Below are positions 16,439-48,391 of a DNA stretch of 64,000 nucleotides, in pieces. Both the position numbers and the translations under genes were made by a program. This DNA comes from Macrostomum lignano (lineage: Eukaryota): the NCBI GenBank assembly GCA_002269645.1, contig NIVC01000276.1, positions 186,001 to 250,000 on the forward strand, in the 5' to 3' direction. Below the pieces are notes generated by a model. That model was not told the DNA's origin and did no database searches. It saw nothing but the letters and a program-made list of their open reading frames with translations. Each line of letters begins with the position of its first letter. Positions within the stretch are counted from its first letter, which is position 1.

Positions 16439-20519
<4,081 letters not shown>

Positions 20520-28000: not shown

Positions 28001-31000
28001 CCCCGCCCCATCGCCCTGGAATGGGGCGGCTCGGCATCGGCCGCCCAGCGGGCCACCGCCAGAAAGATCGGCGTCCGCTCGCACCTGGCCGCCGACGACC
28101 CGGCCGCTCTCCGGACAGACGCAGCGGCCGCCTTCCCCACCGACTGCGCGTTGCCAGCTGGGCAGTTCGCCAGGGAGAACTTCGTCATGTTCGACCAGGA
28201 AGGCCACATGACCCTGGTCAGCGTTGAGGGCTCCATCATCCGGGAGGTGTCCCGGCTGCCTCCGGACACGGCCCTCAGCCGGGTGTCCGCCGTGGTCTGG
28301 AAGGCGGACATGATGGTCATCGGTGACACGGACGGCGGCCTGGCCCTCTGGGATCTCAAGAGTAAAACATCGCGCAGCGTGGCCACTCAGCGGGGCTGCG
28401 TCAGGCGGCTCAAGTTCGCGCCCGGCTCCGGTGAGTCTGGGGATGTGGAGGGCGGGGGAGAGGGCGGAGGCGGATAAGAAGCAGAGAAGAAGGCGGATAA
28501 GAAGGCGGATAAGAAGCAGAGAAGAAGGCGGAGAAGGCGGAGGAGAGGGCGGAGAAGAAAGCGGAGGAGAGGGCGGAGAAGAAGACGGCTAAGAAGGCGG
28601 ATAAGAAGGCGGAGAAGAGGGCGGAGAAGAGGGCGGAGGAGAGGGCGGAGAAGAGGGCGGAGAAGAGGGCGGAGAAGAGGGCGGAGAAGAGGGCGGAGAA
28701 GAGGGCAGAGCAGAGGGCGGAGGAGAGGGCGGAGAAGAAGGTGGAGGAGAGGGCGGAGAAGAAGGTGGAGGAGAGGGCGGAGGAGAGGGCGGAGGAGAGG
28801 GCGGAGGAGAGGGCAGAGGAGAGGGCGGAGAAGAAGGTGGAGGAGAGGGCGGAGGAGAGGGCAGAGGAGAGGGCGGAGGAGAGGGCGGAGAAGAAGGTGG
28901 AGGAGAGGGCAGAGGAGAGGGCGGAGAAGAAGGTGGAGGAGAGGGCGGAGGAGAGGGTGGAGGAGAGGGCGGAGGAGAGGGCGGAGGAGAGGGCAGAGGA
29001 GAGGGCGGAGAAGAAGGTGGAGGAGAGGGCGGAGGAGAGGGCGGAGGAGAGGGCGGAGGAGAGGGCAGAGGAGAGGGCGGAGAAGAAGGTGGAGGAGAGG
29101 GCGGAGGAGAGGGTGGAGGAGAGGGCGGAGGAGAGGGCAGAGGAGAGGGCGGAGAAGAAGGTGGAGGAGAGGGCGGAGGAGAGGGCGGAGGAGAGGGCGG
29201 AGGAGAGGGCAGAGGAGAGGGCGGAGGAGAGGGCGGAGGAGAGGGCAGAGGAGAGGGCGGAGAAGAAGGTGGAGGAGAGGGCGGAGGAGAGGGTGGAGGA
29301 GAGGGCGGAGGAGAGGGCGGAGGAGAGGGCGGAGAAGAAGGTGGAGGAGAGGGCGGAGGAGAGGGTGGAGGAGAGGGCGGAGGAGAGGGCCGAGGGGAAG
29401 GCGGAAGAGATGGAAGAAGAAAGAGAGAAGAGGTCGGTGGAAGAGAGGGTAGCAGAGCGAACAGCCGCATTGGCAAGGCGGTTGAGTTCAGTAGCAACCA
29501 ACCCTCGCCCGTCGAAGGCAACTACAAATTCCTGGTGCTGTTTCCCAACGGCCTGGAGCTGTGGGACGCCCGCGACACCGCCACGAAGCTGACAGCCATG
29601 GCCAGCGCGCGCTGCCCCCGCCACCTGCCGGACCTGCTGGATGCCGACTGGGCCGCCTCCGACAAGCCGCTGCTGCTCACGGCCGACTGGCTAATCCGCG
29701 TCACCGACATGTCGCTGCGGATCTGCCTGTCCCCCGCGGACCCGGCGGCTTTCCAGCGGCCACCAGCGATTCCCGGATTGTTTTCCGACAAGGCCGTCCG
29801 CCTGGCCAAGCACCGCCTGCTGACGGCCGACGGCGGGGCGGAGGCCGGCGACGCCGAGGATGACGAGGCTCGGGAACTGCTGCGCCGCTTCGATCCGGAC
29901 TGGCTGGCCGAGCTGGCGGCGCCGGGCCTGAGCACTGCAGACCGAAGCCTACTCACCGCCATGCTGTTCTGCGACCCCTTCGAGGTGAGTGTGATCCCCA
30001 TTCTCCCCGTGTGATCCCCATTCTCCTTGTGTGATCCCCATTCTCTCCGTGTGATCCCAATTCTCTCAGTGTGATCCCCATTCTCTCCGTGTGATCCCCA
30101 TTCTCTCCGTGTGATCCCCATTCTCTCCGTGTGATCCCCATTCTCCTTGTGTGATCCTCATTCTCCCCGTGTGATCCCCATTCTCCCCGTGTGATCCCCA
30201 TTCTCTTTGTGTGATCCCCATTCTCCTTGTGTGATCCCCATTCTCCCCGTGTGATCACTGTTCTCCCCGTGTGATCCCTGTTCTCCCCGTGTGATCCCTG
30301 TTCTCCCCGTGTGATCCCTGTTCTCCCCGTGTGATCCCTGTTCTCCTCGTGTGATCCCTATTCTCATTTTTTGATCCCTATTCTCCTTGTGTCATCCTCA
30401 TTCTCCCTGTGTGATCACTGTTCTCCCCCGTGTGATCCCCGTTCTTCTTCGGCTCTAGCCCCTTCACCCCCCCCCCGCCATCGCCAGGTCCGCTTCTGGC
30501 TGCTCTGCCGGCGCTTCCTGCCGCAGTCAGCCGACCCGAGCGCCGAGCTGGAGGCCGGCTGGGACTCGCTCAGCCCGCACCCGGTGTACCGGCGCTGGCA
30601 GGCCCGCCGGCTCGCCTGTCTGCTCGGCCGCAGGCGCCGGCTCAGCCCGCAGCAGACGCAGCGGCTGGTGGAGTGCCTGGTGCTGTTCGGCCAGCTGGAC
30701 AAGGCCGTCCAGCTGCTGCTGGAGACCGAGCCCGCCAGCCCGTCCTACCTGGCCGACCTGCACCTGGCCTGCCTGCTGGCCAACCAGCCGGCGTCGCCCA
30801 ACGCGCAGAGCACCGTGAAGCTCGTGGCCACCAGCCTGATGGCCAACGGGCGCGTGTCCGAGGGCGCCCAGCTTCTGTGCCTCATCGACCGCAAGCTGGA
30901 CGCCTGCCGCTACTTGGAGCAGCACGGCGAGCGCAGCACGGCCCTTTGGCTAGCCAAGTGCAGTCTTCGCGACCCGGCCGAAGCGGCCGAGATTGTCCGA

Positions 31001-31348
31001 AGGCACGCCGGACACCTGGCCGGGACAGACCCGTGCCAGGCGGCTTTGCTGCTCATCGCCCAGGGCGACTGGGCGGCCGCCTGCGACTGCCTTTGCCGCC
31101 GCCTTGGCCTGCCCGGCCTCGCCTGCCGCCTCCTGGCCGCCTGCGCTGAGGCCGGCCGCATTCCGGACAGCTCGGACATGTCCGGCGCCGAGCCGGCCGA
31201 CCGAGCTGCCTGGCGCGAGGCGCACGCGGCCTGGGCGCGCCAGCTGGCGCTGCTAGGCGATGAGGCAGGCGCCAGCAGGTGCGCAGAGCTGGCTGAGCTG
31301 GGCTCTGCTGGAGACGGAAATAAGGAGGAGCAAAAACTGACGGAGTGA
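22079..31348 (+). CDS. WDR11: WD repeat-containing protein 11; exons 22079-22917, 23245-23500, 24237-24491, 25249-25884, 26609-26718, 27910-28430, 29518-29984, 30488-31348 (~1314 aa)
   Basis: DWGPQGLLAV, RLAVGHVNGRLLAWD, RRNHVIAVYSREIVLIDL, RNEAAFVDLATG, RQYLALGFRDKPAEIWD, FAPGSGNYKFLVLFPNGLELWD and LDKAVQLLLETEP match WDR11 motifs in order. All seven GT-AG introns are phase-compatible (2,0,0,0,2,1,0). Confidence 0.93.
22965..23128. repeat. Telomere-like (TTTGGG)n tract in WDR11 intron 1
   Basis: Direct inspection; includes one TTAGGG. Confidence 0.93.
23545..23710 (+). repeat. Interspersed repeat, with an inverted copy at 34195-34357
   Basis: ATACACTGGCGCTTATAGGAAAAATCCGACCTTCTGGTAGAATCGTTGAATATCTCGACG closely matches the reverse complement of 34275-34340. 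Confidence 0.85.
23749..23821 (-). tRNA. tRNA-like gene or pseudogene, 73 nt, anticodon position TAA, short variable loop
   Basis: GGGCGGA TA GCTC AGTTGGTA GAGC G CCAGA TTTAAGA TCTGG AGGTC GCGGC TTCGAGC CCCGC TCTATCC A, followed by a T5 terminator. One mismatch each in the acceptor and T stems. Confidence 0.55.
23996..24068 (+). tRNA. tRNA-like gene, 73 nt, anticodon TAT (Ile-type), intronless
   Basis: GGGCAGG TA GCGC AGTTGGTA GAGC G CCGGA TTTATAA TCTGG TGGTC GCGGG TTCGAAC CCCGT TCTGTCC A. Good acceptor, anticodon and T stems, one D-stem mismatch, A/B boxes and a downstream T5. Confidence 0.65.
24517..24900. repeat. 22-bp minisatellite (CATGATCCCTTTGCGGTCCCTT)n in WDR11 intron 3
   Basis: Direct periodicity. 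Confidence 0.93.
24925..25220. repeat. (CACT)n microsatellite in WDR11 intron 3
   Basis: Direct inspection. Confidence 0.97.
25925..26562. repeat. 23-bp minisatellite (TGCACCTGTGTGATGATTGGTGC)n in WDR11 intron 4
   Basis: Direct periodicity with 20-bp variants. Confidence 0.95.
26735..27845. repeat. 12-bp minisatellite (CTGTAACAGGTT)n in WDR11 intron 5, interrupted at 26821-27380
   Basis: The array stops at 26820 and resumes at 27381. Confidence 0.92.
26982..27344 (-). mobile_element. Full-length tRNA-derived SINE with a 17-bp target-site duplication
   Basis: Minus-strand head GGCCGTAGCCCAGCGG...GGCTCGATTCC (A/B boxes) and an A-rich tail. CCCCTCCGGGACAGCCC occurs at both 26965-26981 and 27345-27361. 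Confidence 0.88.
28440..29450. repeat. Purine-rich 12-bp minisatellite (GGAGGAGAGGGC)n in WDR11 intron 6
   Basis: Direct periodicity; source of the AEER/SPPP ORFs. Confidence 0.95.
29989..30440. repeat. 20-bp minisatellite (GTGTGATCCCCATTCTCTCC)n in WDR11 intron 7
   Basis: Starts within the donor site GTGAGTGTGATCCCC. Confidence 0.95.
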
Positions 31349-31369: not shown

Positions 31370-32272
31370 CATGAGATCCCATTTATCCCCGTGTGATACT
31401 ATTTATCCCAATGAGATCCCATTTATCCCCGTGTGATGCTATTTATTCCAATGAGATCCCATTTATCCCCGTGTGATGCTATTTATCCTAATGAGATTCC
31501 ATTTATCCCCGTGTGATGCTATTTATCCCAATGAGATCCCATTTATCCCCGTGTGATGCTATTAATCCCAATGAGATCCCATTTATCCTAATGAGATCCC
31601 ATTTATCCCCGTGTGATGCTATTTATCCGAATGAGATCCCATTTATCCCCGTGTGATGCTATTAATCCCAATGAGATCCCATTTATCCTAATGAGATCCC
31701 ATTTATCCCCGTGTGATGCTATTTATCCGAATGAGATCCCATTTATCCCCGTGTGATGCTATTTATCCGAATGAGATCCCATTTATCCCCGTGTGATGCT
31801 ATTTATCCCAATGAGATCCCATTTATCCCCGTGTGATGCTATTAATCCCAATGAGATCCCATTCATCCCCGTGTGATGCTATTTATCCCAATGAGATCCC
31901 ATTTATCCCCGTGTGATGCTATTTATCCCAATGAGATCCCATTTATCCCCGTGTGATGCTATTTATCCGAATGAGATCCCATTTATCCCCATGTGATGCT
32001 ATTTATCCCAATGAGATCCCATTTATCCCCGTGTGACGCTATTAATCCCATTGAGATCCCATTTATCCCAATGAGATCCCATTTATCCTAATGAGATCCC
32101 ATTTATCCCAATGAGATCCCATTTATCCTAATGAGATTCCATTTATCCCAATGAGATCCCATTTATTCCAATGAGATCCCATTTATCCTAATGAGATCCC
32201 ATTTATCCCAATGAGATCCCATTTATTCCAATGAGATCCCATTTATCCCAATGAGATCCCATTTATCCCAAT
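31370..32272. repeat. 40-bp (2x20) then 20-bp minisatellite (AATGAGATCCCATTTATCCC-based) 3' of WDR11
   Basis: Direct periodicity. Confidence 0.94.
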
Positions 32273-32777
32273 AAGGTTGCCGGATTTGCACCGGTGAATT
32301 TGGGCAGTCTATCTAAGCTATCTTATTAAAGAGGCATAATCAAGTCAGAATAATCAGGTTAATCTGCTGTTTAGGTAATTAATCCGTAGCAATTGTGCAC
32401 TCGAGCCAGTCCTGTGCTCCGCTAATCTGCCAACTCTAATTCCATCATCTGTTTCTGTTGCCAAGCTGCATTGCAGAGCCGCAGTTTTCAAAGTTTTCCA
32501 TTCCTGAAATTTAGAGTACCGGTTTTAGAAATGATGCAGACATCTGAAGCATCAGCATAAATAAACACATTCATTTGTACCGCTTTCTTCATTGCTTCTG
32601 GACCGTCTGCTTTGCAGAATTGAAAAAACAAAAAGTTTTTTATTTGCTTTTTTGAGTGAAATTTCTGATTTCAGCGAAATTAAGAAACTTCCATATCTGG
32701 CTGGCGGGTCTTATCTGCTTATTTTTAGACATAAGCAGAGTCACACAGTTTCAGGTCTTTTTATTAAAGCTTTGAAA

Positions 32778-33626
32778 ATGCTGAGATTCGATAAGTGCGG
32801 AATGCCAGCTGGCCACTGTCTGCTTCTGCTGCAGCTGTTGCCGCTGTCACTGATGGCCGTCGCCGAAGTCAGCGTGTGCCAGCCGGGCATGCGATGGGAC
32901 CCGGGCCAGAACAGGTGCGTCCACTGCACTCAGGCTGAGATTGACTTGGGAGAGTGCGGAGACGGCCTGACTACCCAGCGGGCGGCATCATCAACTGAAG
33001 CTGCGTCTACGGTGTCTGTTTCTACTGAGTCCGATTCGAATTTGTCGTCTTCTCCTAATCTTGCGATTGTCCTACCAATTGTGATACCTGTTGTGCTGAT
33101 TTTGGCTGCTTTCGCCATCATTGCCATCGTTTGCTATTGCAAGCGTCGTTCAACGCGATCTAACAGGCGTCAAGAGCTGGAAGATCAAGAACAGCAGGGT
33201 GATAATACTAAACTACTCAAAGCTGACCAGCCTCGACCGTCTGGTAAACTGCCTGCGGTGCCTGCGGAATCTGCGGAATCTGCGGAATCTGCGAAATCTG
33301 CGGAATCTGCGGAATCTGCGGAATCTGCGGAATCTGCGGAATCTGCGGAATCTGCGGAATCTCAGCAAGGAGTCACAAGGTTTTCTCACAAGAGCCAAGA
33401 ATTACCGCACGGCTTCAGGACAGGCGCGGAGGTCGGAAACGCCACAGGCGAGGAGGATGGAAACGCCGCAGAGATCACTGGTGCGCCCGGCTCGGTGACT
33501 GGCAGCGGCTCTCCTGAAGGCCGAGACGGAGAGGCGAGACTGCAGCTTCTTTCGACTGCTCTGGAAAACCGGGACCGACCCGCTTATGCTGATGGTGATG
33601 AAGGCACGGCTGCGACTGGTACCTAA
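32778..33626 (+). CDS. TNFR-like single-CRD type I membrane protein 1 (chimeric, with an AES repeat in the tail), ~282 aa
   Basis: Signal-like LLLLQLLPLSLMAVA; CQPGMRWDPGQNRCVHC; Ser/Thr stalk; TM LAIVLPIVIPVVLILAAFAIIAIVCY followed by KRR; intronless ORF. The start could be ATG 32778 or 32802. Confidence 0.8.
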   Translation: MLRFDKCGMPAGHCLLLLQLLPLSLMAVAEVSVCQPGMRWDPGQNRCVHCTQAEIDLGECGDGLTTQRAASSTEAASTVSVSTESDSNLSSSPNLAIVLPIVIPVVLILAAFAIIAIVCYCKRRSTRSNRRQELEDQEQQGDNTKLLKADQPRPSGKLPAVPAESAESAESAKSAESAESAESAESAESAESAESQQGVTRFSHKSQELPHGFRTGAEVGNATGEEDGNAAEITGAPGSVTGSGSPEGRDGEARLQLLSTALENRDRPAYADGDEGTAATGT

Positions 33627-34962
33627 GAGTCTGTGCCTTAGGCGTCACACCTAACTTCGCTTAAAGTTGACTGTATTATCCAAGCAATAATCTCCCATAT
33701 TTTTTGTTATGCACTTTCAATCCAAAAACCAAATAATTTGTCCTGATCGGTTATTCATGTTATGTTCATTTCAGAGCATTTTTAGTCAGATAAAGCTTGA
33801 TTTTTTTTACAATTCGGTTTGATTTACTGCAGAACCGACAGCAATCTCGGTGATTTCCCTAACCTAATTTGAAATACATGTATAAGACGAACCTGGCAGA
33901 CAGAAGCCTCTGTACTTTCTTTAAACTTAAACTAAACAAGTTCGAATGCATAAGCTATACTCGTACGATTACTCATGGTGGACTGAAAAAAATCGTTGCG
34001 TTGCGAAATTTATTGGGGAGATTTCATAATTTTTAGAACTAAATTCCCAATTTCTCGCCTTCTGAACTTCTGAATTGTAAACTGCTCTGCAATGGTGTGG
34101 GCGCGGCTTTGCAATGCGAGCCATTTTTCCTCCCGTCAAACTACCAAAAGGGGGACCCCCTGACATTTTTTACTGCGCCGGAACGGAGCAACGCAGGCAC
34201 ACGAAATTCAAGAACACGGGCTAACTTTTTGTTGCGCACCTTCTCAAACAGGAATCAAGTCGCCAGTCCTCAGGACCGTCGAGATATTCAACGATTCTGC
34301 CAGAAGGTCGGATTTTCCACATAAGCGCCAGTGTATTCAATGCACCCCTGTGCGCCAATCAGCCCTGCGCCTCAGTGCAGCCTTGCCAAGCCTCCAAATT
34401 TCATTAGCACGTCAACCGCATGTGTCTGCATCAGCTCTGACTTCGTTGGTCTTCTGAGATCTTCAGCGGGTGGTACCAGGTGACTATGGACTCAAACATT
34501 CCGTCATCAAACGAATGATGTACAACATTTTTGTTTGAATCTTTTAAGCTTACTCACGAGTTTTTTTAAATTAAAAAGCTTACAATGTACGTACATTTCG
34601 TACAACAAAAATATCTGGTCTAAATTAAACTAAATTTTTATCTGTCACTCTACTGACAGTAGAAATTTAAGGAAAATAAACAAAGAAAATAATCTATAAA
34701 AAGTGTCCAGTACATGTACTGAATAGCTAATCTAAAAACATTGTTAGGGCAGTACACAACCATTACCGTTGAGATACACCGCTAATTTCTCTCACTGTAC
34801 TCTGCACTGTGCAGTTCTGAGTACACAGCAATGAGCTCTCTTGTGTGCTCAACTGTGTCACAGCGCTCTCAGATTGAAACACTGTCACTGACCGAAGTTG
34901 AGACGGGTAATGGGTAAAAATAGATTATCAGTCAAGCATTTACTGTACATTGTACCTGGAAC

Positions 34963-34969
34963 TGACTCA
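34963..34969. promoter_or_regulatory. AP-1 consensus TGACTCA ~80 bp upstream of receptor gene 2 (duplicate at 39665-39671)
   Basis: Exact consensus match; function not shown. Confidence 0.35.
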
Positions 34970-35048
34970 TTATTATACTGAGCTCCAGTATGACAAAATT
35001 TGAAAGATTCACAGAGCTAACCTTACAAAAAATTTTCAAGACTTCAAC

Positions 35049-35762
35049 ATGAGTATCTTGTCAGCTCTAATCACATTGCTGCTAGCTGCTCAAGCTTACG
35101 GCAACACCTGCTCAAAGGCTGGCGAGTACTTCGACTCGGGCCAGCAGATGTGCCTCCGCTGCCCGCTGCCTTCATCGGAAATCCAAGTCCACCTGCACTA
35201 CTTGAGCACCTGTCGCAACCATCCAGTCTGCTGCGTTGCCAACTCGACAGGCAAGCCGAGAGGCGCCCCTGACGAGTGGCGTCCAGACGCTACAGCGAGC
35301 TCACCAGCTCAGGCAGCTGGTGAATCAACCGTTTGGATCGTCATCGGTGCGCTCGTGCTTGCTGGTCTTCTGACAGTTCAAATCCTGGCTCTCATTCTGG
35401 TGTACGTGAAGTTTGTCAGAGCCAGGCAGGGAGAAAGGCAGGCCGAAAAGGGCTCATCAGCTTCTGTCCCACCTGATGTCAACACCGACGAAGCAGCGTC
35501 GCCTTGTGATGAAGAGCGTAGATCGTTTCTACATACGAGTTGCCATGGCAACCAACACGATGCAGCAGCCGGCCAGTCAGCTGGAACCGACTCTCCAGCT
35601 TCTCAGCAGACAGGAGAGCGCGAATTTGCGTCAGCGAGTCAGCCTGCAAATCACCATGGAAACGAGCAGCGAGCGAACACAGTTATGAATTCGATTGTGT
35701 ATCAGAAAAATGGGTCAGTTCGTAGATCTGCATATCCTGAGAGTACCTATGACTCAGCTTAA
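35049..35762 (+). CDS. TNFR-like single-CRD type I membrane protein 2 (BCMA/TACI-like CRD), 237 aa
   Basis: Signal peptide MSILSALITLLLAAQAYG; CSKAGEYFDSGQQMCLRC...C.....CC; TM VWIVIGALVLAGLLTVQILALILVYV; tail ending SAYPESTYDSA. Confidence 0.85.
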   Translation: MSILSALITLLLAAQAYGNTCSKAGEYFDSGQQMCLRCPLPSSEIQVHLHYLSTCRNHPVCCVANSTGKPRGAPDEWRPDATASSPAQAAGESTVWIVIGALVLAGLLTVQILALILVYVKFVRARQGERQAEKGSSASVPPDVNTDEAASPCDEERRSFLHTSCHGNQHDAAAGQSAGTDSPASQQTGEREFASASQPANHHGNEQRANTVMNSIVYQKNGSVRRSAYPESTYDSA

Positions 35763-35836
35763 ATGCATGCTTTTTTATAGAAGATTTGGCTCTGCGATTG
35801 TTGAAGCTGCACGGTAATCTGTAACCGTTAAACGGT

Positions 35837-36178
35837 ATGCACGTTGGCTATTGCAAGCGTCGTTCAACGCGATCTAACAGGCGTCAAGAGAAGGAAGATC
35901 AAGGACAGCAGGGTGATGATATTCAACTATTCAATGCTAACCAGCCTCGACCGTCTGGTAAACTGCCTGCGGTGCCTGCGGAACATGCGGAATCTGCGGA
36001 ATCTGCGGAATCTGCGGAATCTGCGGAATCTGCGGAACATGCGGAATCTGCGGAATCTGCGGAATCTGCGGAATCTGCGGAATCTGCGGAATCTGCGGAA
36101 CATGCGGAATCTGCGGAATCTGCGGAATCTCAGCAAAGAGTCACGCAGACCAGCCAGCCTACAAATCCATGCGAGTAG
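35837..36178 (+). pseudogene. Tail-only remnant of a gene-1-type receptor (no signal peptide, CRD or TM)
   Basis: From GCTATTGCAAGCGT (35846) it is near-identical to gene 1 from 33133. It has 17 AES/AEH units and a different 3' end ([15 protein letters not shown]). Confidence 0.75.
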
Positions 36179-36264
36179 CTGCCATCGTCACAAGCCTGCC
36201 GTCATCAACTAACAGAATTTTTGATATTCAGCCTAGAGACCTCTTGTCTAACGTCAAATACTCG

Positions 36265-36534
36265 TATATTCAGCAACATCGAAAAGTCGCCATCACAGAA
36301 GATTGAGAGTGAGTGCAGGTAAAATCTCTCAATCTTTGCGAGTGACGCAAATTAGCTACGCCTGGGCAGACTTGAGTTGAGGAATGAAGTGGAGGGGGCG
36401 GTGTGCGAGGGTTAACGCTACGGATCAAAGCTACCCCGATCAGTTTTCTCGTATCTTTGATTTCAGAACAGTCCAAGAGAAATTGCTCACTGGGTGGCGC
36501 ATAGAGTGGCGACTTTTCAATGTTGCTGAGTATA
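36265..36534. mobile_element. MITE with ~28-bp TIRs and TA ends (Tc1/mariner-type)
   Basis: TATATTCAGCAACATCGAAAAGTCGCCA at 36265 pairs with TGGCGACTTTTCAATGTTGCTGAGTATA at 36507-36534 (2 mismatches). Confidence 0.78.
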
Positions 36535-36708
36535 TTTATTTTTAATAAATTAATTTATTGATCGCTAACTTTGACCAAAAATTATATATTTCCTCTAAAA
36601 AAGATTACACCCAACTAAACTCCTTGTTTGCTATCTTATCTCTGACTTGGCCTCAAAAGCTTATAAACCTAGGCGCACTGGGAATTCAGCTGCAAGCTGT
36701 CTGTCGCT

Positions 36709-37886
36709 ATGCTGTCTGAGTCTGCTGTCTGCTCCGGGCGGCCAGGTGAGTCAAGCATTTCGAAATATTTTTTCTTTTAATTTTTTCAAGTAGATAAAAT
36801 TTTATTTCAAGCTATTTGACGTTATTCCCTTTCTTATGTGCACACGTGTGTTGTTTCTAAAATTAAAAGTGACGCAAATATTCATATGTATTGCAACACT
36901 ACGAGCTAATTTATAGAAATTTTCCAATGTAAAAAACGTTTTTTACTAATAATCTAGTCAACATTAACTAAGCTCGAGCAGTGTTCCAAGAAACCCCATC
37001 CCCCCAATATTCACCATCCCCGGTTATTCCCAATCTCCGATAACTCCCTTTTTATTTAATTCCCATGCCCGATATCCCCCGTCCCCGATATCCCCCATAC
37101 CCGATATCCCCCATCCCCGATATCCCCCATCCCCGATATCCCCCATTCCCGATATCCCCCATCCCCGATATCCCATCCCCGATATCCCCCATCCCCGATA
37201 TCCCCCATCCCCGATTTTCCCCATCCCTGATACTCTCCATCCCCGATATTTCCATCCCCTGATATTCCCAATACTTTCATATCCCCCATCCCCGATATCC
37301 CATCCCCGATATCCCCCATCCCCGATATCCCCCATCCCCGAAATCCCATCCCCGATATCCCCCATCCCCGATATCCCCCATCCCCGATATCCCATCCCCG
37401 ATATCCCCCATCCCCGATATCCCCATCCTCAATATTTACCACTCCCTCCCGATATTCCCCATAAAGTTCTCGGGCCGCGCCATTCGCCAATGCAAAATTG
37501 ACTTCAGAATTTCTTTAGCGACCCCCGCCTCTCCCCGCCCCACAGGCCGCTGCTACGACCCCGGCCAGAACCTCTGCGTCCGATGCCCCGACGGAGCGAC
37601 CAGGGCAGAACCGCGGTCCGCCAGTTCGAACCCCAGCGGGACGCCATCTACGCTGTCAACCGGTGAGACTGACAGGACTGACACTCAGTTTGCATTGATG
37701 GTTTTGCTGGTCGCTTCTTGGTCAGCGGTGGTCCTTCTCCTGGGGCTGCTGCTGGTGATGGTCTGGCGCTGCAATCGGCAGCCTCGAGCCGCCACAACTG
37801 CCGCCCCTGAGCCTCAGGAGGTAATCGACAGCTCCTCAGATGCTGGCTATGAGCGTCTCAGCTCTGTTGACAATGCTGAAAATTGA
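36709..37886 (+). CDS. TNFR-like single-CRD membrane protein 4; exons 36709-36745 and 37546-37886 (~125 aa)
   Basis: The phase-1 GT-AG join gives SAVCSGRPG|RCYDPGQNLCVRC, which aligns with gene 1 VSVCQPGMRWDPGQNRCVHC. TM FALMVLLVASWSAVVLLLGLLLVMVW; tail has PQEVID and YERL. The true start is uncertain (in-frame TAG at 36670). Confidence 0.65.
37005..37430. repeat. C-rich ~16-bp minisatellite (ATCCCCGATATCCCCC)n in the receptor gene 4 intron
   Basis: Direct inspection. Confidence 0.92.
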
Positions 37887-38225
37887 TCTTAAAAATTTAC
37901 AAACTCCGACTGTATAAAACTGATTGAATTCAACAATTTTTTGCGTAACAGCCTTGTACAAATATCAGAATAAATACTTGAGTAGTCCTTGACACAATGG
38001 CGCTCCATCTCGCTCAACACACTGTGAGTGGCTCTGCCTATCTCTGTCTGAAAGCCCCTAAGTGACGAATTCTCTATAAATAGAAATAAATGTACGTGCA
38101 ACCATACGGTTTTTCCGAGGAAAAACCTCAAACTGGACGTGGAACTAAATTATATTCTACTTGTTTGAGTAAACCTTTGAAAGAAGATACTAAATTCAAT
38201 ACAATCTCCAGACAACTCAGCAAAC

Positions 38226-38918
38226 ATGAGGTTCTTGTGCAAAATCAATAAAGCTGCTGCCGCCAGCTTTTCAATTCTATTCACACTGCTGCTCGCCGCA
38301 CAAGCTGGCAACCGCACCTGCTCAAAGGCTGGCGAGTACTTCGATCCGGGCCAGCAGATGTGCCTCCGCTGCCCACTGCCTTCATCGGAAATCCTAATCC
38401 ACCTGCACTACCTCAGCACCTGTCGCGACCATCCAGTCTGCTGCGTTGCCAACACAACATCCGGGTCGACAGCTGTTCCCAGCTGGAAGCCGCCGCACAG
38501 CAGCAGCAGCAGCAGCAGCAGTTGCAGCAGCGGCACCACAACTTTGAGCTCACCGCTCCAGGCCCAGGGGATGTCAACCAGTTGGATGGTTTTTGGCGCA
38601 GCCGCTCCTGTCCTGGCCATTGCTTTGATCATGCTCGGTGTCTGGAAGTTTTCTCACAAGAGCCAAGAATTACCGCACGGCTTCAGGACAGGCGCGGAGG
38701 TCGGAAACGCCACAGGCGAGGAGGACGGAAACGCCGCAGAAATCACTGGCGGCGCGCCCGGCTCCGTGACAGGCAGCGGCTTTCCTGAAAACCGAGATGG
38801 AGAGGCGAGCCTGCAGCTGCTCCAGACTGCTCTGGAAGATCGGAACCGACCCGTTTATGCTGATGGTGATGAAGACACGACTGGTACCTACGAGACTGTC
38901 TTTGCTGTCACATCTTAA
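38226..38918 (+). CDS. TNFR-like single-CRD type I membrane protein 5, 230 aa
   Basis: Signal ...SILFTLLLAAQAG; CRD CSKAGEYFDPGQQMCLRC near-identical to genes 2/6; poly-Ser stalk; TM WMVFGAAAPVLAIALIMLGVW; tail shared with gene 1, ending PVYADGDEDTTGTYETVFAVTS. Confidence 0.85.
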   Translation: MRFLCKINKAAAASFSILFTLLLAAQAGNRTCSKAGEYFDPGQQMCLRCPLPSSEILIHLHYLSTCRDHPVCCVANTTSGSTAVPSWKPPHSSSSSSSSCSSGTTTLSSPLQAQGMSTSWMVFGAAAPVLAIALIMLGVWKFSHKSQELPHGFRTGAEVGNATGEEDGNAAEITGGAPGSVTGSGFPENRDGEASLQLLQTALEDRNRPVYADGDEDTTGTYETVFAVTS

Positions 38919-39749
38919 ACTCGCTTAAAGCTGGCTATACTATCCAAGAAATAATCTCCCATATTTTTCTCTGTTGTGCACTGTCAATCAAAAAGCCAAA
39001 TAATTTATTTGTCCTGATCGGTTATTTATGTTATTCATGTTAGGTTCATTTCAGAGCATTTTTCGGAAGCTTGATTTTCTACAATTCAGTTTGACTCACT
39101 GCAGAACCAACAGCAATCTCGGTGGTTTCCCTAACCTAATTTGAAATACATGTATAAGACGAACCAGGCAGACAGAAGCCTCTGTACTTTCCTTGAGCGC
39201 TTTAACGACCTTTTTTGTTTGAATCTTTTGAAGGTAATCACGAGTCTTTAAGATTAAAAAAGCTTACAATGTACGTATCTAGATACATTTTCGTACAACA
39301 AAAACATCTGGTCTAAATTATACTAAACTTTTTCTGTTACTCTACTGACAGTAGAAATTTAAGGAAAATACGCAAAGAAAATAATAAATAATAATCTATA
39401 AGAAATGTCCAATACATGTACTGAATAGCTAATCTAACAACATTGTTAAGGCAGTACACAACCATTACCGTTGAGATACACCGCTAATTTCTCTCACTGT
39501 ACTCTGCACTGTGCAGTTCTGAGTACACAGCAATGAGCTCTCTTGTGTGCTCAACTGTGTCACAGCGCTCTCAGATTGAAACACTGTCACTGACCGAAGT
39601 TGAGACGGGTAATGGGTAAAAATAGATTATCAGTCAAGCATTTACTGTACATTGTACCTGGAACTGACTCATTATTTTACTGAGCTCCAGTATGACAAAA
39701 TTTGAAAGATTCACAAAGCTAACCTTACAAAATTTTTCAAGACTTCAAC

Positions 39750-40454
39750 ATGAGCATCTTGTCAGTTCTAATCACATTGCTGCTAGCTGTTCAAGCTTAC
39801 GGCAACACCTGCTCAAAGGCTGGCGAGTACTTCGACTCGGGCCAGCAGATGTGCCTCCGCTGCCCGCTGCCTTCACCGGAAATCCAAGTCCACATGCACT
39901 ACCTGAGCACCTGTCGCGACCATCCAGTCTGCTGCGTTGCCAACTGGACAGGCAAGCCGAGTGGCGCCCCTGACGAGTGGCGTCCAGACGCTAAAGTGAG
40001 CTCACCAGCTCAGGCAGCCGATGAATCACCCATTTGGATCGTCATCGGAGCGCTCGTACTTGCTGCCATTCTGACAGTTAGCATCCTGGCTCTCATTCTG
40101 CTGTACGCGAAGTTTGTCAGAGCCAGGGAGGGAGAAAGGCAGGCCGAAAAGGGCTCATCAGCTTCTGTCCCACCTGATGTCAACACCGACGAAGCAGCGT
40201 CGCCTTGTGATGAAGAGCGTAGATCGTTTCTACATACGAGTTGCCATAGCAACCAACACGATGCAGCAGCCGGCCAGTCAGCTGGAACCGACTCTCCAGC
40301 TTCTCAGCAGACAGAAGAGCGTGAGGTTGCGTCAGCGGGTCAGCCTGCAAATCACCATGGAAACGAGCAGCGAACGAACACAGTAATCGACTGGGTTGTG
40401 TATCAAAACAATGCGTCAGTTCGTAGTTCTGCATATCCTGAGAGTGACATATGA
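39750..40454 (+). CDS. TNFR-like single-CRD type I membrane protein 6 (recent paralogue of gene 2), 234 aa
   Basis: Collinear with 35049-35762, including >500 bp of upstream flank. Confidence 0.85.
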   Translation: MSILSVLITLLLAVQAYGNTCSKAGEYFDSGQQMCLRCPLPSPEIQVHMHYLSTCRDHPVCCVANWTGKPSGAPDEWRPDAKVSSPAQAADESPIWIVIGALVLAAILTVSILALILLYAKFVRAREGERQAEKGSSASVPPDVNTDEAASPCDEERRSFLHTSCHSNQHDAAAGQSAGTDSPASQQTEEREVASAGQPANHHGNEQRTNTVIDWVVYQNNASVRSSAYPESDI

Positions 40455-40529
40455 CTCAGAATAAATGCATGCTTTTTTCTTTAAAAGATTTTTCTTCTGC
40501 GATTGTTGAAGCTGCATGATAATCTATTC

Positions 40530-41577
40530 ATATGTAGCCTAGAGGGGGTTATAGCCTAGAGGGGGTTGTAGCCTAGAGGGGGTTTTAGCCTAGAGGGGGT
40601 TGTAGCCTAGAGGGGGTTGCAGCCTATAGGGGGTTGCAGCCTAGAGGGGGTTGTAGCCTAGAGGGGGTTGTAGCCTAGAGGGGGTTGTAGCCTAGAGGGG
40701 GTTGTAGCCTAGAGGGGTTGTAGCCTAGAGGGGGTTGCAGCCTAGAGGGGGTTGTAGCCTAGAGGGGGTTGTAGCCTAGAGGGGGTTGTAGCCTAGAGGG
40801 GGTTGTAGCCTAGAGGGGGTTGCAGCCTAGAGGGGGTTGTAGCCTAGAGGGGGTTGCAGCCTAGAGGGGGTTGCAGCCTAGAGGGGGTTGTAGCCTAGAG
40901 GGGGTTGTAGCCTAGAGGGGGTTGCAGCCTAGAGGGGGTTGTAGCCTAGAGGGGGTTGTAGCCTAGAGGGGGTTGTAGCCTAGAGGGGGTTGTAGCCTAG
41001 TGAGGGGGTTGTAGCCTAGTGAGGGGTTGTAGCCTAGTAAGGGGTCGTAGCCTAGAGGGTGTTGTAGCCTAGAGGGGGTTGCAGCCTAGAGGGGGTTGTA
41101 GCCTAGAGGGGGTTGTAGCCTAGAAGGTGTTGTAGCCTAGAGTGGGTTATAGCCTAGAGGGTGTTGTAGCCTAGAGGGTGTTGTAGCCTAGAGGGGGTTA
41201 TAGCCTAGAGGGTGTTGTAGCCTAGAGGGTTTTGTAGCCTAGAGGGGGTTTTAGCCTAGAGGGGGTTGCAGCCTAGAGGGGGTTGTAGCCTAGAGGGGGT
41301 TGTAGCCTAGAGGGGGTTGTAGCCTAGAGGGGGTTGTAGCCTAATGAGGGGGTTGTAGCCTAGAGGGGGTTGTAGCCTAGAGGGGGTTGTAGCCTAGAGG
41401 GGGTTGTAGCCTAGAGGGGGTTGTAGCCTAGAGGGGGTTGTAGCCTAGAGGGGGTTGTAGCCTAATGAGGGGGTTGTAGCCTAGTGAGGGGTTGTAGCCT
41501 AGTGAGGGGGTTGTAGCCTAGTGAGGGGTTGTAGCCTAGTGAGGGGTTGTAGCCTAGTGAGGGGTTGTAGCCTAGTG
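40530..41577. repeat. 17-bp minisatellite (GTAGCCTAGAGGGGGTT)n continuous with a SINE 5' end
   Basis: ~60 units; the last units grade through GTAGCCTAGTGAGGGGTT into GTAGCCTAGTGGTTAGAGCG. Confidence 0.95.
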
Positions 41578-42229: not shown

Positions 42230-42865
42230 AATGCAACCAGCTCTGCTCATTATTCACTCATCACCATCTCTGCTCATGACTCACCTATCACCAGCTCTGC
42301 TCATGACTCACCCATCACCAGCTCTGCTCATGACTCACCCATCACCAGCTCTGCTCATGGCTCACCTATCACCAGCTCTGCTCATGGCTTACTCATCACC
42401 AGCTCTGCTCATGACTCACTCATCAACAGCTCTGCTCATGACTCACCTATCACCAGCTCTGCTCATGACTCACTCATCACCAGCTCTGCTCATGACCCAC
42501 TCATCACCAGCTCTGCTCATGACCCACCCATCACCAGCTCTGCTCATGACTCACCCATCACCAGCTCTGCTCATGACTCACTCATCACCAGCTCTACTCA
42601 TGACCCACTCATCACCAGCTCTGCTCATGACTCACTCAGCACCAGCTCTGCTCATGACTCACTCATCACCAGCTCTGCTCATGACCCACTCATCACCAGC
42701 TCTGCTCATGACCCACCCATCACCAGCTCTGCTCATGACTCACTCATCACCAGCTCTGCTCATGACCCACTCAGCACCAGCTCTGCTCATGACTCACTCA
42801 GCACCAGCTCTGCTCATGACTCACCTATCACCAGCTCTGCTCATGGCTCACTCATGACTAGTTCT
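42230..42865. repeat. 27-bp minisatellite (ATCACCAGCTCTGCTCATGACTCACCC)n
   Basis: Direct periodicity. Confidence 0.95.
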
Positions 42866-43320
42866 ACTCATTCCACCTTCTAGGACGAAATAGAGACAAG
42901 AGACGTAGCAGACTCAGATAAATGATTTTGATCTCGTATCTATTGTACAAAAGTTTGCAACTCGAAAATTTGAACTGGTATTAAGCGGGAAGATTATGTA
43001 GAGAAAGCATAACTCATAGTTTTGGACCCGAAAAACTTTGAGAGACTGCTTAAGCACACCTTAGAATCCACAGTATTTTGATGTCTTTTTCATTTCGAAC
43101 AGCGCTTTTACATGTAGAAGTGCTCTTTTGGTGACTAGGCATTCATCATCGCCGAAAATACGAGGAGCGTGTGACCTGGCGAAATTTTAACGTCGAATAA
43201 CGTTGCATCATTGTAGTTCGTTCATTCATAATTTTATCTCATATTTCAGTATTCTTGGCTTGTGGGCCTGTCATTGACTAAAATAGTTTCTGCATAGAAG
43301 CAAACGAACAAGTGGTGCTT

Positions 43321-43483: not shown

Positions 43484-44234
43484 ATGCTGATTTTCAAGTC
43501 ACCATGGGAGACCTGGTCCCTGTTATTGCTAATGGTTGCGGCTTTGAATGATGCAACAAGAACAGCAGACTGCCCGGTAAATCAGCGCTTCGACCCCAGC
43601 ATCAGCATGTGCGTGCAACTTCAGCCTCTACCAAAGTTCGACGCTTTGACCACTGGATGGATGGGTCAGATTTCCACAGACTCGACAATGAACCACGTCG
43701 GTAGTACGTCGCAAAATCCCTCGACAGAGAGACTGACGCCGAGCATCATTGCACTACTGGCGCTTGCTGGTATGGCGGCTTTCGGAATGTTGTTGTACCG
43801 ATTGGTGACTTTGGTTAGACAGAAGCGTCAGGACAAGCTGCTCACCTGGTCAAGAACAGATGTTGAGGCCGGCCGAATTAACAGTGGTGGTTGTGACAGC
43901 GGTAAAATCAGCATTGGCAGTCATGAAGCTTTCGGTAAGAGTTCAAATATTTTATTGTATTGTCTGTAACTAACTACTGAATATACATGTAGTTCATTCT
44001 GTTCATGAGGATCGACAGGTTTGATCTCGTGAGCTTTTGTTCCTAAAGACTTAACTTTAAACTTTCTCAGGTGGTAATCTGGTCCCAGTGATCAACAAGT
44101 GGCCGCTGCCACCTGTCCCTGAGGAAGAGCTCCTTCAGGACGTTCAACATGACGATGGGCCAGATGGTGCAGAGGCATTCAATCTGCTGGTCAGGGACCC
44201 TGTGCGACCGGAGTACGCGGGACTGGGTAGTTGA
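43484..44234 (+). CDS. Receptor-like type I membrane protein 7 with a minimal two-Cys CRD-like motif; exons 43484-43934 and 44071-44234 (~204 aa)
   Basis: Signal WSLLLLMVAALNDA; CPVNQRFDPSISMC; TM IIALLALAGMAAFGMLLYRLVTLV. A phase-1 GTAAG...CTCAG intron leads to a tail with KWPLPPVPEEE and DPVRPEYAGLGS*. Confidence 0.8.
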
Positions 44235-44769: not shown

Positions 44770-45650
44770 TGTTTAATTTCCTTTATGTACAATGCTTTTA
44801 AAGTTAGTAGCTTTCCACCACTGTATTGACTTGTCAATAATACTACGAGCTAAATTGGTCAATCTGTTAGCGTTGTGTACAGTGGTTGCACACGAGGTGA
44901 TCATGCACAGTGGACACTTTTTGAAATGTTCCTTTGCTCTTGTGTGCAGGTTTCGCTCTGTTTTACCAATGTCAAACTGGCTCTGCTCAGAAAAATTTGT
45001 AAATGACACCAACAACAACAACAACAACAGAGTACGCTGTTAGTTCGCAAAAGCAGCGTCAGATGGCTCGCTTCGAAGCTTGGGCGCGATCAAAGGCCGC
45101 ACCGCCGGCAGAGTCCGGGGCGCCGGCGTCAGCCAGCAGCCAGCAGTCCTCGCCTGTCCCCGCCGGTAGGGTGCCTGCAACGTAAGTAGCAGCACTTCCT
45201 GCACCGGCTCCGGACAGTAGGCCTCGGCGCCTGCCAGCTGGAGTCGCCGACGGTGCAGCAGATCGCTAGGACGGGCCAGGCCGGCGCGATGATAGAGCGC
45301 CGTGTTGGTGACTCGCTCGTTGCCGATCTTGAAGGCGGCGCGCAGCAGGCCAGCGTGCGCCGCGTCAACTTGAGCCTCGAGCGAGTCTGTCAGCGTCCAG
45401 GTCTCGGCGTTGTATAACAGGACGGTCTCGATCACCGCCTGGAACAGCGCCGCCCTCTGGCGGTCCGGCACCAGCATGTGCATTTAGTCGCTTAGTAACA
45501 GTACACTTGAGGTTTTTGAGTAAGATTAATCATTTTCTCATTGCGTTTTTTGGTTTAGAACCAAACTTTTTGTCGATGAAGTTGTTGACCTCAGTTTCAA
45601 CAAACTTTTTAGGGTAATCGTTTTTTGTAAAATATTTTATTAAAAAGGTA
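44770..45650 (-). mobile_element. Degenerate Penelope-like element fragment, interrupted by a LINE at ~45010-45483
   Basis: IGKTERNLHTRAKEH (GIY-YIG endonuclease motif) at ~44970-44925. FTKNDYPKKFVETEVNNFIDK at ~45630-45570 resembles the Penelope RT C-terminal NGYP motif. Confidence 0.65.
45010..45483 (-). mobile_element. 5'-truncated non-LTR retrotransposon (RTE-like) 3' end with a (GTT)n tail
   Basis: LFQAVIETVLLYNAETWTLT...LLRAAFKI...VTNTALY..AGL..PS.LL.RRRLQLAG is the post-RT region typical of RTE-type LINEs; microsatellite tail at 45010-45028. Confidence 0.82.
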
Positions 45651-47842: not shown

Positions 47843-48391
47843 ATGCAGCGCGCGTCGGCAACGAAACTGTCGGTGCTGTGCGCGCTGCTCCTGCTGAACC
47901 TGTGCCTCAGTCCGGCCGGATCGTCCAGCATCCGGGCTTCCCGGCTGTTCAAGAGCAGAGCGTCCGGCTGCCCCCCAGGCAGCTACCTGGCCAGGCCATC
48001 GCTGCTGTCCGTCCTAGCCGAGCCCGAGTGCAGGCCGTGTCCGAGCTCTGAACCGGACAGCGGAAAACCTCCTGGCCGGCTGGACTGGCTCTACAGGCGG
48101 GCCTTCCAGCTGGTGCACCCGGAGTGCGCGGCCGAGGCCAGCAAGAAGAACGCGGAAGGACAGCGGCGCCTCGGCCTGGGCGGGCTCGGCGCTCTGGCGG
48201 CGGGCGTTGCCATGGCCGGAGCTGTACTTTTTGTGGCCTATCAGAAACGACGCCTGACGCGCCGTCGAGAGCGAGACGGCGGCCCGCGGTCTGGACATCC
48301 GCTGGAACCAATCTGTGGTGGAGGACAAGTCCGGGACGCTGGGCCTGACTGGACTGAGTCTGAGATGACAGTTTCTCTAAGCGATTGCTGA
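47843..48391 (+). CDS. TNFR-like type I membrane protein 9 with a classical CRD1-like motif, 182 aa
   Basis: Signal KLSVLCALLLLNLCLSPAGS; CPPGSY...ECRPCP...HPEC; TM LGLGGLGALAAGVAMAGAVLFVAY then QKRR; short tail. Confidence 0.8.
   Translation: MQRASATKLSVLCALLLLNLCLSPAGSSSIRASRLFKSRASGCPPGSYLARPSLLSVLAEPECRPCPSSEPDSGKPPGRLDWLYRRAFQLVHPECAAEASKKNAEGQRRLGLGGLGALAAGVAMAGAVLFVAYQKRRLTRRRERDGGPRSGHPLEPICGGGQVRDAGPDWTESEMTVSLSDC

What the first reader, a model, noticed from the sequence alone, without database searches (positions are those of the whole stretch)
33133..38918. Ectodomain and tail modules shuffled between receptor paralogues near domain borders
Seen: (1) gene 5 carries a ~140-bp CRD almost identical to genes 2/6 up to GTTGCCAAC, then an unrelated stalk, TM and tail. 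(2) Gene 5's tail, starting right after its TM (TTTTCTCACAAGAGCC, 38648), is fused onto gene 1 at ~33380 after the AES repeat, although gene 1 has a different CRD. (3) The remnant at 35846 begins exactly at gene 1's TM/cytoplasm border and keeps a different, possibly ancestral, 3' end. The same ligand-binding module is thus wired to two signalling tails, and one tail to two ectodomains, without introns at the junctions. Inference: recombination or gene conversion generates combinatorial receptors, reminiscent of paired immune receptors.
Basis: partly seen in the sequence, partly recalled or inferred. Interest (0 to 1): 0.78.

Follow-up and report, generated by a model that had tools for sequence, protein, structure and literature searches.

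The report
Duplication-made chimeric flatworm receptor gene
In a cluster of small membrane-receptor genes of the flatworm Macrostomum lignano, a local tandem duplication plus patches of gene conversion produced one fused gene and one dead gene fragment, which is a real but ordinary way for gene families to evolve.

Summary
The window is Macrostomum lignano contig NIVC01000276.1, in a tandem cluster of intronless, lineage-specific, single-pass membrane proteins just downstream of WDR11.

The layout is P-M-[T-I-G]A | M'-E-gene4-F-[T-I-G]B. That is a head-to-tail segmental duplication of about 4.7 kb. Its start lies inside gene 1, near the TM/cytoplasm border, and its end lies at the edge of a 17-bp satellite. 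The first copy then lost about 2.5 kb (E, gene 4 and the 5' part of gene 5) without breaking the reading frame. This fused gene 1's cytoplasmic AES-repeat region to a copy of gene 5's tail. It also left the 5'-truncated remnant at 35842-36178.

Gene 5's resemblance to genes 2/6 is a sharply bounded tract of about 190 bp (dS about 0.1-0.2). It sits inside old paralogues whose stalk and TM are still homologous (45% aa) but saturated at synonymous sites, which indicates gene conversion. A second contig has the same layout and a block-wise A/B mosaic, so conversion appears to continue.

No ITIM, ITAM or charged-TM signature supports the analogy with paired immune receptors. Nothing here shows expression. 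I rate this an ordinary chimeric-gene event of modest interest.

The parts
32778..33626 (+). Gene 1: chimeric ORF of 282 aa. It has a signal peptide, a Cys motif (CQPGMRWDPGQNRCVHC), a stalk, a TM, the cytoplasmic AES repeat, and then a gene-5-type tail.
   Evidence: The ORF is continuous. The gene is not annotated and no identical protein is on record.
32778..33127 (+). Block P: the unique 5' part of gene 1 (signal peptide, Cys motif, stalk, most of the TM). It has no second copy in the window.
   Evidence: Self-BLAST finds no paralogous match. A full HMMER search found no real homologue anywhere.
33128..33377 (+). Block M: end of the TM, the KRRSTRS... cytoplasmic segment and the (CTGCGGAAT)x11 AES repeat. 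It is duplicated as M' in the remnant.
   Evidence: 93.6% identity to 35842-36076. The repeat was found by TRF.
33376..33380 (+). Junction J1, the in-frame fusion point. Gene 1 reads GTC ACA|AGG TTT, the remnant GTC ACG CAG ACC, and gene 5 GTC TGG AAG TTT.
   Evidence: Alignments. There is at most 1-3 bp of microhomology.
33378..33924 (+). Block T_A: the copy of gene 5's cytoplasmic tail (coding to 33626) plus its 3' flank. The stop TAA sits where gene 5 has TAC (Tyr of GTYETV), so the last 9 residues are lost.
   Evidence: Against T_B, dS = 0.167 and dN = 0.059.
33925..34527 (+). Intergenic segment present in copy A and mostly present in copy B of the second contig, but deleted from copy B of the window.
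34528..35833 (+). The rest of copy A: the upstream region and gene 2 (35049-35762, 237 aa) plus about 70 bp of 3' flank, ending in TGTAACC, which matches the first unit of the 17-bp satellite.
   Evidence: 92.5% identity to 39212-40525, with a 100% identical stretch at 34764-34963.
35831..35841 (+). Junction J2, the tandem-duplication junction. An 11-nt filler, AACGGTATGCA, lies between the end of copy A and the start of M'.
   Evidence: The filler occurs once in the window.
35842..36178 (+). Remnant: M' (35842-36145, with the AES/AEH repeat x17) plus E (36146-36178, ...[10 protein letters not shown]-stop), the inferred original 3' end of gene 1. It lacks a signal peptide, an ectodomain and most of the TM.
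36710..37886 (+). Gene 4: a paralogue with one intron. Exon 1 is about 36710-36747 and exon 2 about 37546-37886; the intron holds a 16-bp satellite. The gene lies inside the stretch that is missing from copy A.
   Evidence: GT...AG boundaries read from the sequence. The motif GRCYDPGQNLCVRC aligns with the family. TRF result.
38226..38918 (+). Gene 5 (230 aa): the donor-type gene for the tail. It consists of block F (38226-38645) and block T_B (38646-38918).
   Evidence: The second-contig counterpart P0001 is 89% identical.
38267..38453 (+). Gene-conversion tract covering part of the signal peptide and the CRD, shared with genes 2 and 6.
   Evidence: 165/187 bases identical. dS is 0.11-0.18 inside the tract; in the adjoining stalk/TM, pS is 0.73.
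38646..40532 (+). Copy B of the duplicated unit: tail T_B, the intergenic region and gene 6 (39750-40454, 234 aa).
40533..41575 (.). 17-bp satellite (TGTAGCCTAGAGGGGGT, about 61 copies) at the distal breakpoint of the duplication.

Best explanation
The ancestral order was P-M-E (gene 1 with a short tail), gene 4, F-T (gene 5), intergenic I, G (gene 6), then the satellite. A head-to-tail duplication copied the ~4.7-kb unit from M to the end of G. Its proximal breakpoint fell inside gene 1, four codons before the TM/cytoplasm border. Its distal breakpoint fell at the edge of a 17-bp satellite. The first copy lacks the ~2.5-kb stretch E-gene 4-F. Either a later non-homologous deletion removed it, or the whole structure arose in one replicative event with two template switches. 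The result joined M in frame to a copy of gene 5's tail, giving chimeric gene 1. It also gave a new copy of gene 6 (gene 2) and a promoterless, 5'-truncated copy of gene 1's cytoplasmic part, which keeps the original 3' end (the remnant). A separate ~190-bp non-allelic gene conversion had already homogenised the signal-peptide/CRD region of gene 5 with the gene 2/6 lineage; these are old tandem paralogues. Further conversion between copies A and B has since made them mosaics. Shown: the block layout, the junction positions, the contrast in synonymous divergence, and the mosaic site patterns. Inferred: the polarity (gene 1 is the derived gene), the order of events, and the repair mechanism.
For: The tail match and the gene 2/6 match form a single colinear unit, 33377-35833 to 38646-40532. 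The end of copy A abuts the start of M' with only an 11-nt filler, which is the end|start signature of a tandem duplication. Nothing upstream of M (block P) is duplicated. Copy B is followed by the satellite, and copy A keeps that satellite's first 7 bases. M' is contiguous with E-gene 4-F-T_B, exactly the stretch missing from copy A. Polarity: gene 5's homology to genes 2/6 runs across its TM/tail border (KFSHKSQ against KFVRARQ), so F-T is native, and gene 1 carries that same first tail codon pair (AGG TTT against AAG TTT). Conversion tract: dS is 0.11-0.18 inside 38267-38453, while pS is 0.73 in the stalk/TM, which still aligns as protein. Second contig NIVC01001652.1 has the same order and the same junctions. 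Variable sites among A, window-B and second-contig-B fall in four long runs of a single pattern each, as gene conversion predicts.
Against: Divergence between the A and B copies is uneven: the tail is about 85%, the gene 2/6 promoter 100%, and the CDS 88-100%. The age of the duplication therefore cannot be read off, and a single event cannot be separated from two. No pre-duplication locus (outgroup species or third subgenome copy) could be retrieved, so polarity rests on internal evidence only. The block 32639-36388, which carries both junctions, is nearly identical in the two contigs (2 mismatches and 2 one-base indels) while its flanks differ by 2-8%. The second contig is therefore not a fully independent witness. 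The Mlig_3_7 assembly is known to contain chimeric scaffolds and collapsed haplovariants (PMC10733133).
Confidence: 0.74

Rival explanations
1. Assembly artefact. The mosaic arises from chimeric joining or collapse of similar haplovariant or paralogous reads in the Mlig_3_7 PacBio assembly, and the chimeric gene 1 and the remnant do not exist in the animal.
For: 36% of the Mlig_3_7 assembly length lies in chimeric scaffolds, and collapsed or expanded haplovariants are reported (PMC10733133). The block holding both junctions is almost identical in the two contigs while the flanks differ. The second contig has a 1-bp homopolymer insertion in gene 1 that could be a read error.
Against: The same order and junctions occur in two contigs whose flanks differ on both sides. 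J1 is in frame and leaves a 282-aa ORF. The copies joined at the junctions are 7-15% diverged, too different to be confused during assembly. A misjoin between repeats would occur inside shared sequence, yet both junctions lie where homology ends.
Confidence: 0.07
2. Reverse polarity. P-M-T (gene 1 as it stands) is the ancestral gene. After duplication of M-T-I-G, the stretch E-gene 4-F was inserted between M' and T_B, so gene 5 is the chimera.
For: The block layout alone is symmetrical with respect to insertion versus deletion. In the second contig the gene 5 tail is 97-99% identical to gene 1's tail.
Against: This needs a 2.5-kb insertion that happens to carry a complete paralogue plus a precisely in-frame 5' gene half. 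Gene 5's homology with genes 2/6 continues across the F|T border. E provides a stop codon, and an AATAAA lies about 370 bp downstream, as expected of a genuine gene end. No other source of E-gene 4-F exists in the window.
Confidence: 0.08
3. Selected combinatorial diversification. The cluster is an immune-type receptor family in which recombination and conversion are favoured because they re-pair ligand-binding and signalling modules, as in paired activating and inhibitory receptors.
For: One CRD type is coupled to two tails, and one tail to two ectodomains. Conversion is still active. Paralogues evolve fast: gene 2 versus gene 6 gives dN/dS of 0.86. One source labels gene 2 as TNFR-Cys domain-containing.
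Against: No ITIM or ITAM is present, the TM has no charged residue, and the only YxxV is lost in the chimera. Only one fusion event exists, and it came with a dead fragment. There are no expression or ligand data and no homologues outside M. lignano. Pfam and PDB give no TNFR match.
Confidence: 0.07

Closest known systems
Chimeric and partial genes created by tandem duplications whose breakpoints fall inside genes (surveyed in Drosophila yakuba and D. simulans: PMC4069613, PMC5460883)
   Same: There is a head-to-tail duplicated unit with an end|start junction. A 5'-truncated partial gene copy sits at that junction. A new ORF joins parts of two parental genes. The junctions are non-homologous, with little or no microhomology.
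   Different: Here the chimera sits at a second junction, an internal 2.5-kb loss in copy 1, rather than at the duplication junction itself. The genes are intronless at the junctions, so the fusion had to be in frame at the DNA level. Transcription is not shown.
Interlocus (non-allelic) gene conversion among tandem paralogues, i.e. concerted or mosaic evolution of multigene families
   Same: The high-identity tract is short and sharply bounded. Synonymous divergence is low inside it and the surrounding sequence is saturated. Site patterns between copies are block-wise mosaics.
   Different: Nothing unusual. The tract happens to cover the signal peptide and the Cys-rich motif.
Paired activating/inhibitory immune receptors (KIR, LILR, Ly49, PIR), named from general knowledge
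   Same: Similar ectodomains are attached to different cytoplasmic tails in neighbouring genes of a cluster shaped by recombination.
   Different: There is no ITIM or ITAM logic, no charged TM residue, no Ig or lectin fold, and no evidence of immune function.
Single-CRD TNF receptors (BCMA, TACI, BAFF-R type), named from general knowledge plus a source label
   Same: They are small type-I membrane proteins. The N-terminal motif C-x5-[YW]-[FW]-D-x-G-Q-x2-C-x2-C resembles the A1 hairpin module (BCMA: CSQNEYFDSLLHACIPC, quoted from memory).
   Different: There is no Pfam or PDB sequence match, and the structure model is too poor to test the fold. The canonical platyhelminth TNFR described in PMC7519573 is a different, multi-CRD protein.

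Membership tests
Chimeric gene from tandem segmental duplication | Two colinear copies of a multi-kb unit lie head to tail, with the end of copy 1 abutting the start of copy 2. | tested here: met
   33128-35833 and 35842-40532. The junction carries an 11-nt filler.
Chimeric gene from tandem segmental duplication | A breakpoint inside a gene leaves a truncated partial copy. | tested here: met
   The remnant at 35842-36178 lacks block P.
Chimeric gene from tandem segmental duplication | One uninterrupted ORF joins segments whose closest relatives are two different parental genes. | tested here: met
   Gene 1 has a 282-aa ORF. M is 93.6% identical to the remnant, and T is 85-97% identical to the gene 5 tails.
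Chimeric gene from tandem segmental duplication | The chimera is transcribed and translated. | not testable with these tools
   No RNA data were available, and no identical protein is on record.
Interlocus gene conversion | A sharply bounded tract of high identity lies between paralogues that are otherwise divergent but homologous. | tested here: met
   165/187 bases identical inside the tract, 40-50% just after it and 8/40 just before it. The stalk/TM is still homologous, with E = 2e-6.
Interlocus gene conversion | Synonymous divergence is much lower inside the tract than outside it. | tested here: met
   dS is 0.11-0.18 inside; pS is 0.73 (saturated) outside. The outside estimate rests on only 41 codons.
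Interlocus gene conversion | Phylogenetic signal switches in blocks along the paralogues when a second haplotype is compared. | tested here: met
   There are four long runs of a single site pattern among A, window-B and second-contig-B.
Paired activating/inhibitory immune receptors | Ectodomains are closely similar while tails differ. | tested here: met
   For gene 5 versus genes 2/6, the CRD is 94% identical and the tails are not alignable.
Paired activating/inhibitory immune receptors | One tail carries an ITIM or ITSM. | tested here: not met
   A regex scan of all cluster proteins found no ITIM in genes 1, 2, 5 or 6.
Paired activating/inhibitory immune receptors | The partner has a short tail with a charged TM residue, or carries an ITAM. 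| tested here: not met
   No ITAM was found. The TM segments read contain no K, R, D or E.
TNF receptor superfamily (single-CRD BCMA/TACI/BAFF-R type) | A match to a TNFR-type Pfam model (TNFR_c6, BCMA-Tall_bind, TACI-CRD2, BaffR-Tall_bind) above the gathering score. | tested here: not met
   Genes 2 and 5 match no Pfam family even at E <= 10.
TNF receptor superfamily (single-CRD BCMA/TACI/BAFF-R type) | The A1-module motif C-x(4-6)-aromatic-x(5-10)-C-x2-C at the N-terminus of a type-I membrane protein. | tested here: met
   The motif is present in genes 1, 2, 5 and 6. The pattern was written from memory, and the full PS00652-like pattern is not met.
TNF receptor superfamily (single-CRD BCMA/TACI/BAFF-R type) | The TNFR CRD fold. 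| tested here: inconclusive
   The AlphaFold2 model has mean pLDDT 49.7, with only a weak hairpin at residues 9-20. The PDB sequence search found nothing.

The most novel reading that the evidence does not exclude
The WDR11-adjacent cluster is a flatworm-specific family of BCMA/TACI-like single-hairpin receptors. In it, frequent non-allelic conversion and occasional in-frame DNA-level fusions are maintained by selection to re-pair ligand-binding heads with signalling tails. The remnant ORF (a cytosolic copy of gene 1's AES-repeat domain with a junction-created ATG at 35837) acts as a decoy or regulator.
Probability: 0.06. Interest if true: 0.7.

Novelty: new member of a known kind. Interest (0 to 1): 0.3.

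Why it matters
This is a clean, base-resolved example of how an intronless receptor gene can acquire a new cytoplasmic tail. A local duplication and an in-frame loss did it, and the discarded original 3' end is still visible next door. It also shows active paralogue-to-paralogue conversion in the neopolyploid M. lignano genome, which matters for annotating and assembling that genome. Genes 1 and 5 are unannotated in this contig. It does not reveal a new mechanism or a new kind of receptor system.

Tried and rejected
I tried several routes that gave nothing.
- Pfam on all cluster proteins found nothing above cut-off for the receptors. Only the upstream ORF is recognisable, as WDR11.
- A PDB sequence search with the gene 2 ectodomain found no TNFR.
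- AlphaFold2 on a 6-sequence ectodomain alignment gave pLDDT 49.7, so I did not run a fold search.
- Homologue searches with gene 5 and gene 1 returned only M. lignano proteins.
- An exhaustive HMMER search with gene 1's P+M part gave only weak, short hits.
- Exact-protein look-ups for genes 1 and 5, which could have found transcript-derived contigs, returned nothing.
No pre-duplication locus was therefore obtained.

I rejected three ideas.
- Exon shuffling through introns: the ORFs are continuous across the junctions.
- NAHR between repeats as the cause of J1 or J2: there is no shared sequence at the breakpoints.
- Insertion of a mobile element as the origin of the 608-bp A-only segment: most of it is present in copy B of the second contig, so the window's copy B has a deletion.

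Full report
**Identity of the region**

The window is eukaryotic. Locus L003, fetched through a homologue of gene 2, equals window 25049-45817 with no mismatch. The window is therefore Macrostomum lignano contig NIVC01000276.1 of assembly GCA_002269645.1.

The last exon of WDR11 ends at 31348 (Pfam TPR_WDR11, E = 1e-12). Downstream lies a tandem cluster of small type-I membrane protein genes that are mostly intronless:

| Gene | Coordinates | Note |
|---|---|---|
| gene 1 | 32778-33626 | chimeric |
| gene 2 | 35049-35762 | |
| remnant | 35842-36178 | fragment of gene 1 |
| gene 4 | about 36710-36747 and about 37546-37886 | one intron |
| gene 5 | 38226-38918 | |
| gene 6 | 39750-40454 | |
| further members | 43484, 45994, 47843 (start positions) | |

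The members share an N-terminal motif, C-x5-[YW]-[FW]-D-x-G-Q-x2-C-x2-C. One source labels gene 2 'TNFR-Cys domain-containing'. Pfam, a PDB sequence search and a structure model did not confirm that label. No homologue outside M. lignano was found.

**Check of the observation**

Self-BLAST and global alignments confirm all three homology statements, with E-values down to 1e-158.

- Gene 5 matches genes 2 and 6 at 131/140 bases up to GTTGCCAAC, and at 165/187 over 38267-38453.
- Gene 5's tail and 3' flank (38648-39191) match 33380-33919 at 85.5%.
- The remnant matches gene 1 from four codons before the KRR that follows the TM, through the AES repeat, to GAGTCAC. It then has its own short end.

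One statement is wrong. Gene 5's stalk and TM are not unrelated to those of genes 2/6. The post-CRD parts alone align with E = 2e-6 and 45% identity over 47 residues.

The tail match and the gene 2/gene 6 match (34528-35820 to 39212-40525, 92.5%) are two parts of one colinear duplicated unit, 33377-35833 to 38646-40532. An indel interrupts it. I use these names for the blocks:

- P: the unique 5' part of gene 1
- M: end of the TM to the end of the AES repeat
- E: the remnant's own 3' end
- F: the 5' part of gene 5
- T: the tail plus its 3' flank
- I: the intergenic region
- G: gene 2 or gene 6

The locus then reads P-M-[T-I-G]A | M'-E-gene 4-F-[T-I-G]B-satellite. The end of copy A abuts M' with only an 11-nt filler, which occurs once in the window. 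Copy A retains the first bases of the 17-bp satellite that follows copy B.

This is the signature of a head-to-tail duplication of the unit M...G, about 4.7 kb. Copy 1 lacks the 2.5 kb that corresponds to 36146-38645 (E, gene 4, F). The loss is in frame. Gene 1 reads GTC ACA|AGG TTT, the remnant reads GTC ACG CAG, and gene 5 reads TGG AAG TTT.

The same structure could also arise in a single replicative event with two template switches. The data do not separate these two mechanisms.

**Polarity**

Gene 5's homology with genes 2/6 continues across its TM/tail border (KFSHKSQ against KFVRARQ). F-T is therefore native, and gene 1 is the derived chimera. The remnant preserves the probable original end of gene 1.

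In gene 1 the copied tail stops at TAA where gene 5 has TAC. It thus loses the last nine residues, including the only YxxV motif.

**The gene 5 versus gene 2/6 similarity**

I computed Nei-Gojobori estimates for each segment.

| Comparison | Segment | Result |
|---|---|---|
| gene 5 vs genes 2/6 | CRD | dS = 0.11 |
| gene 5 vs genes 2/6 | signal peptide + CRD | dS = 0.18 |
| gene 5 vs gene 2 | stalk/TM (41 aligned codons) | pS = 0.73, saturated |
| T_A vs T_B | tail coding part | dS = 0.167, dN = 0.059 |
| gene 2 vs gene 6 | whole CDS | dS = 0.082, dN/dS = 0.86 |
| M vs M' | non-repeat part | 0 synonymous, 10 nonsynonymous differences (not significant) |

Purifying selection on the protein cannot produce the first contrast. 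A ~190-bp conversion tract inside old paralogues can.

**Second contig**

NIVC01001652.1 (L001/L002) carries the same gene order and the same junctions. Over window 32639-36388, which spans gene 1 through the remnant, the two contigs differ by two mismatches and two single-base indels. One of those indels is a T insertion that frameshifts gene 1. The flanks differ by 2-8%.

Copy B differs strongly between the contigs, and in blocks:

- Across the tail and its flank, the second contig's copy B resembles copy A (96-99%).
- Across the gene 2/6 promoter, the window's A and B copies are identical and the second contig's B is distinct.
- Across the 5' half of the G coding sequence, the two B copies agree against A.
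- Across the G tail, the second contig's B again resembles A.

Each B copy also has its own intergenic deletion relative to A. This block-wise pattern is what repeated non-allelic conversion produces.

The literature gives two relevant facts about this assembly. It holds three subgenomes with about 2% SNP divergence, and it contains many chimeric scaffolds (PMC10733133). An assembly contribution therefore cannot be excluded. However, the junctions lie where homology ends, not inside shared repeats, and they occur in two different flanking contexts.

**Comparison with known systems**

Formation of chimeric and partial genes by tandem duplications with intragenic breakpoints is well documented (for example PMC4069613 and PMC5460883). 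So is mosaic evolution of tandem paralogues by gene conversion. The locus meets the tested defining features of both.

The paired-immune-receptor analogy meets only the feature 'similar heads, different tails'. It fails the ITIM, ITAM and charged-TM tests. TNFR membership is a lead, not a result.

**Verdict**

It is not supported in claiming a combinatorial, immune-like shuffling system. Novelty: a new member of a known kind. Interest: about 0.3.

Noticed in passing
window 32639-36388 versus L002 7591-11340: The 3.75-kb block from just upstream of gene 1 to just past the remnant is almost identical in the two M. lignano contigs (2 mismatches, 2 one-base indels). The flanks on both sides differ by 2-8% or more. 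This could reflect a recent exchange between subgenome copies, a shared haplotype block, or an assembly or polishing artefact.
   Followed up: partly
L002 about 8113 (equivalent to window about 33160): The second contig has a single extra T (TC-TAAC becomes TCTTAAC). It frameshifts gene 1 after ...KRRSTRS and truncates the ORF to 128 aa. It is either a real null allele or a long-read homopolymer error.
   Followed up: partly
window 34764-34963 versus 39466-39665: At least 200 bp just upstream of genes 2 and 6 are 100% identical, although the neighbouring tail and flank are only about 85% identical. The corresponding stretch of the second contig's copy B is only 77-89% identical to either. This points to a very recent conversion of the putative promoter/5' UTR within the window haplotype.
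   Followed up: partly
window 35837-36178: The junction filler creates an ATG (35837) that opens a 113-aa ORF. The ORF covers the duplicated cytoplasmic AES/AEH-repeat segment and has no signal peptide or TM. It is probably meaningless, but it is an intact ORF in both contigs.
   Followed up: no
window 33262-33362, 35976-36130, 38498-38535: Coding micro- and minisatellites lie inside the receptor genes. They are the 9-bp CTGCGGAAT repeat (AES, 11 copies in gene 1 and 17 in the remnant) and a CAG/AGC run that encodes poly-Ser in gene 5's stalk.
   Followed up: no
window 31371-32269, 37062-37428, 40533-41575, 42236-42871, and 2659-8428, 25767-26656, 28410-30367: The window is packed with minisatellite arrays of periods 16, 17, 27, 40 and others. 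They lie in introns and intergenic DNA. One fills the gene 4 intron and one marks the distal duplication breakpoint.
   Followed up: partly
window 22000-31348 (+) and 16439-20519 (+): The flanking genes are WDR11 (C-terminal TPR domain hit; the gene call in L003 gives 1325 aa) and, upstream of it, ORFs that resemble an SLC3A2/4F2hc-type heavy chain (…FAGLTKDELEQFAKDPFW… plus a TM). I identified the second gene by eye only.
   Followed up: partly
window 43484-43969, 45994-46641, 47843-48391, 49941-51545: Further small single-pass membrane protein genes lie downstream. They carry degenerate versions of the N-terminal Cys motif. One larger gene has a 17-aa tandem repeat (GAAPKGGSGHTKSLISD) ahead of a TM. 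The cluster therefore extends at least 17 kb.
   Followed up: no
window 45040-45483 (-) and 61172-61705 (-): One ORF resembles the C-terminal part of a LINE reverse transcriptase (…VLLYNAETWTL…), and another resembles a glycerophosphodiester phosphodiesterase. I identified both by eye only.
   Followed up: no
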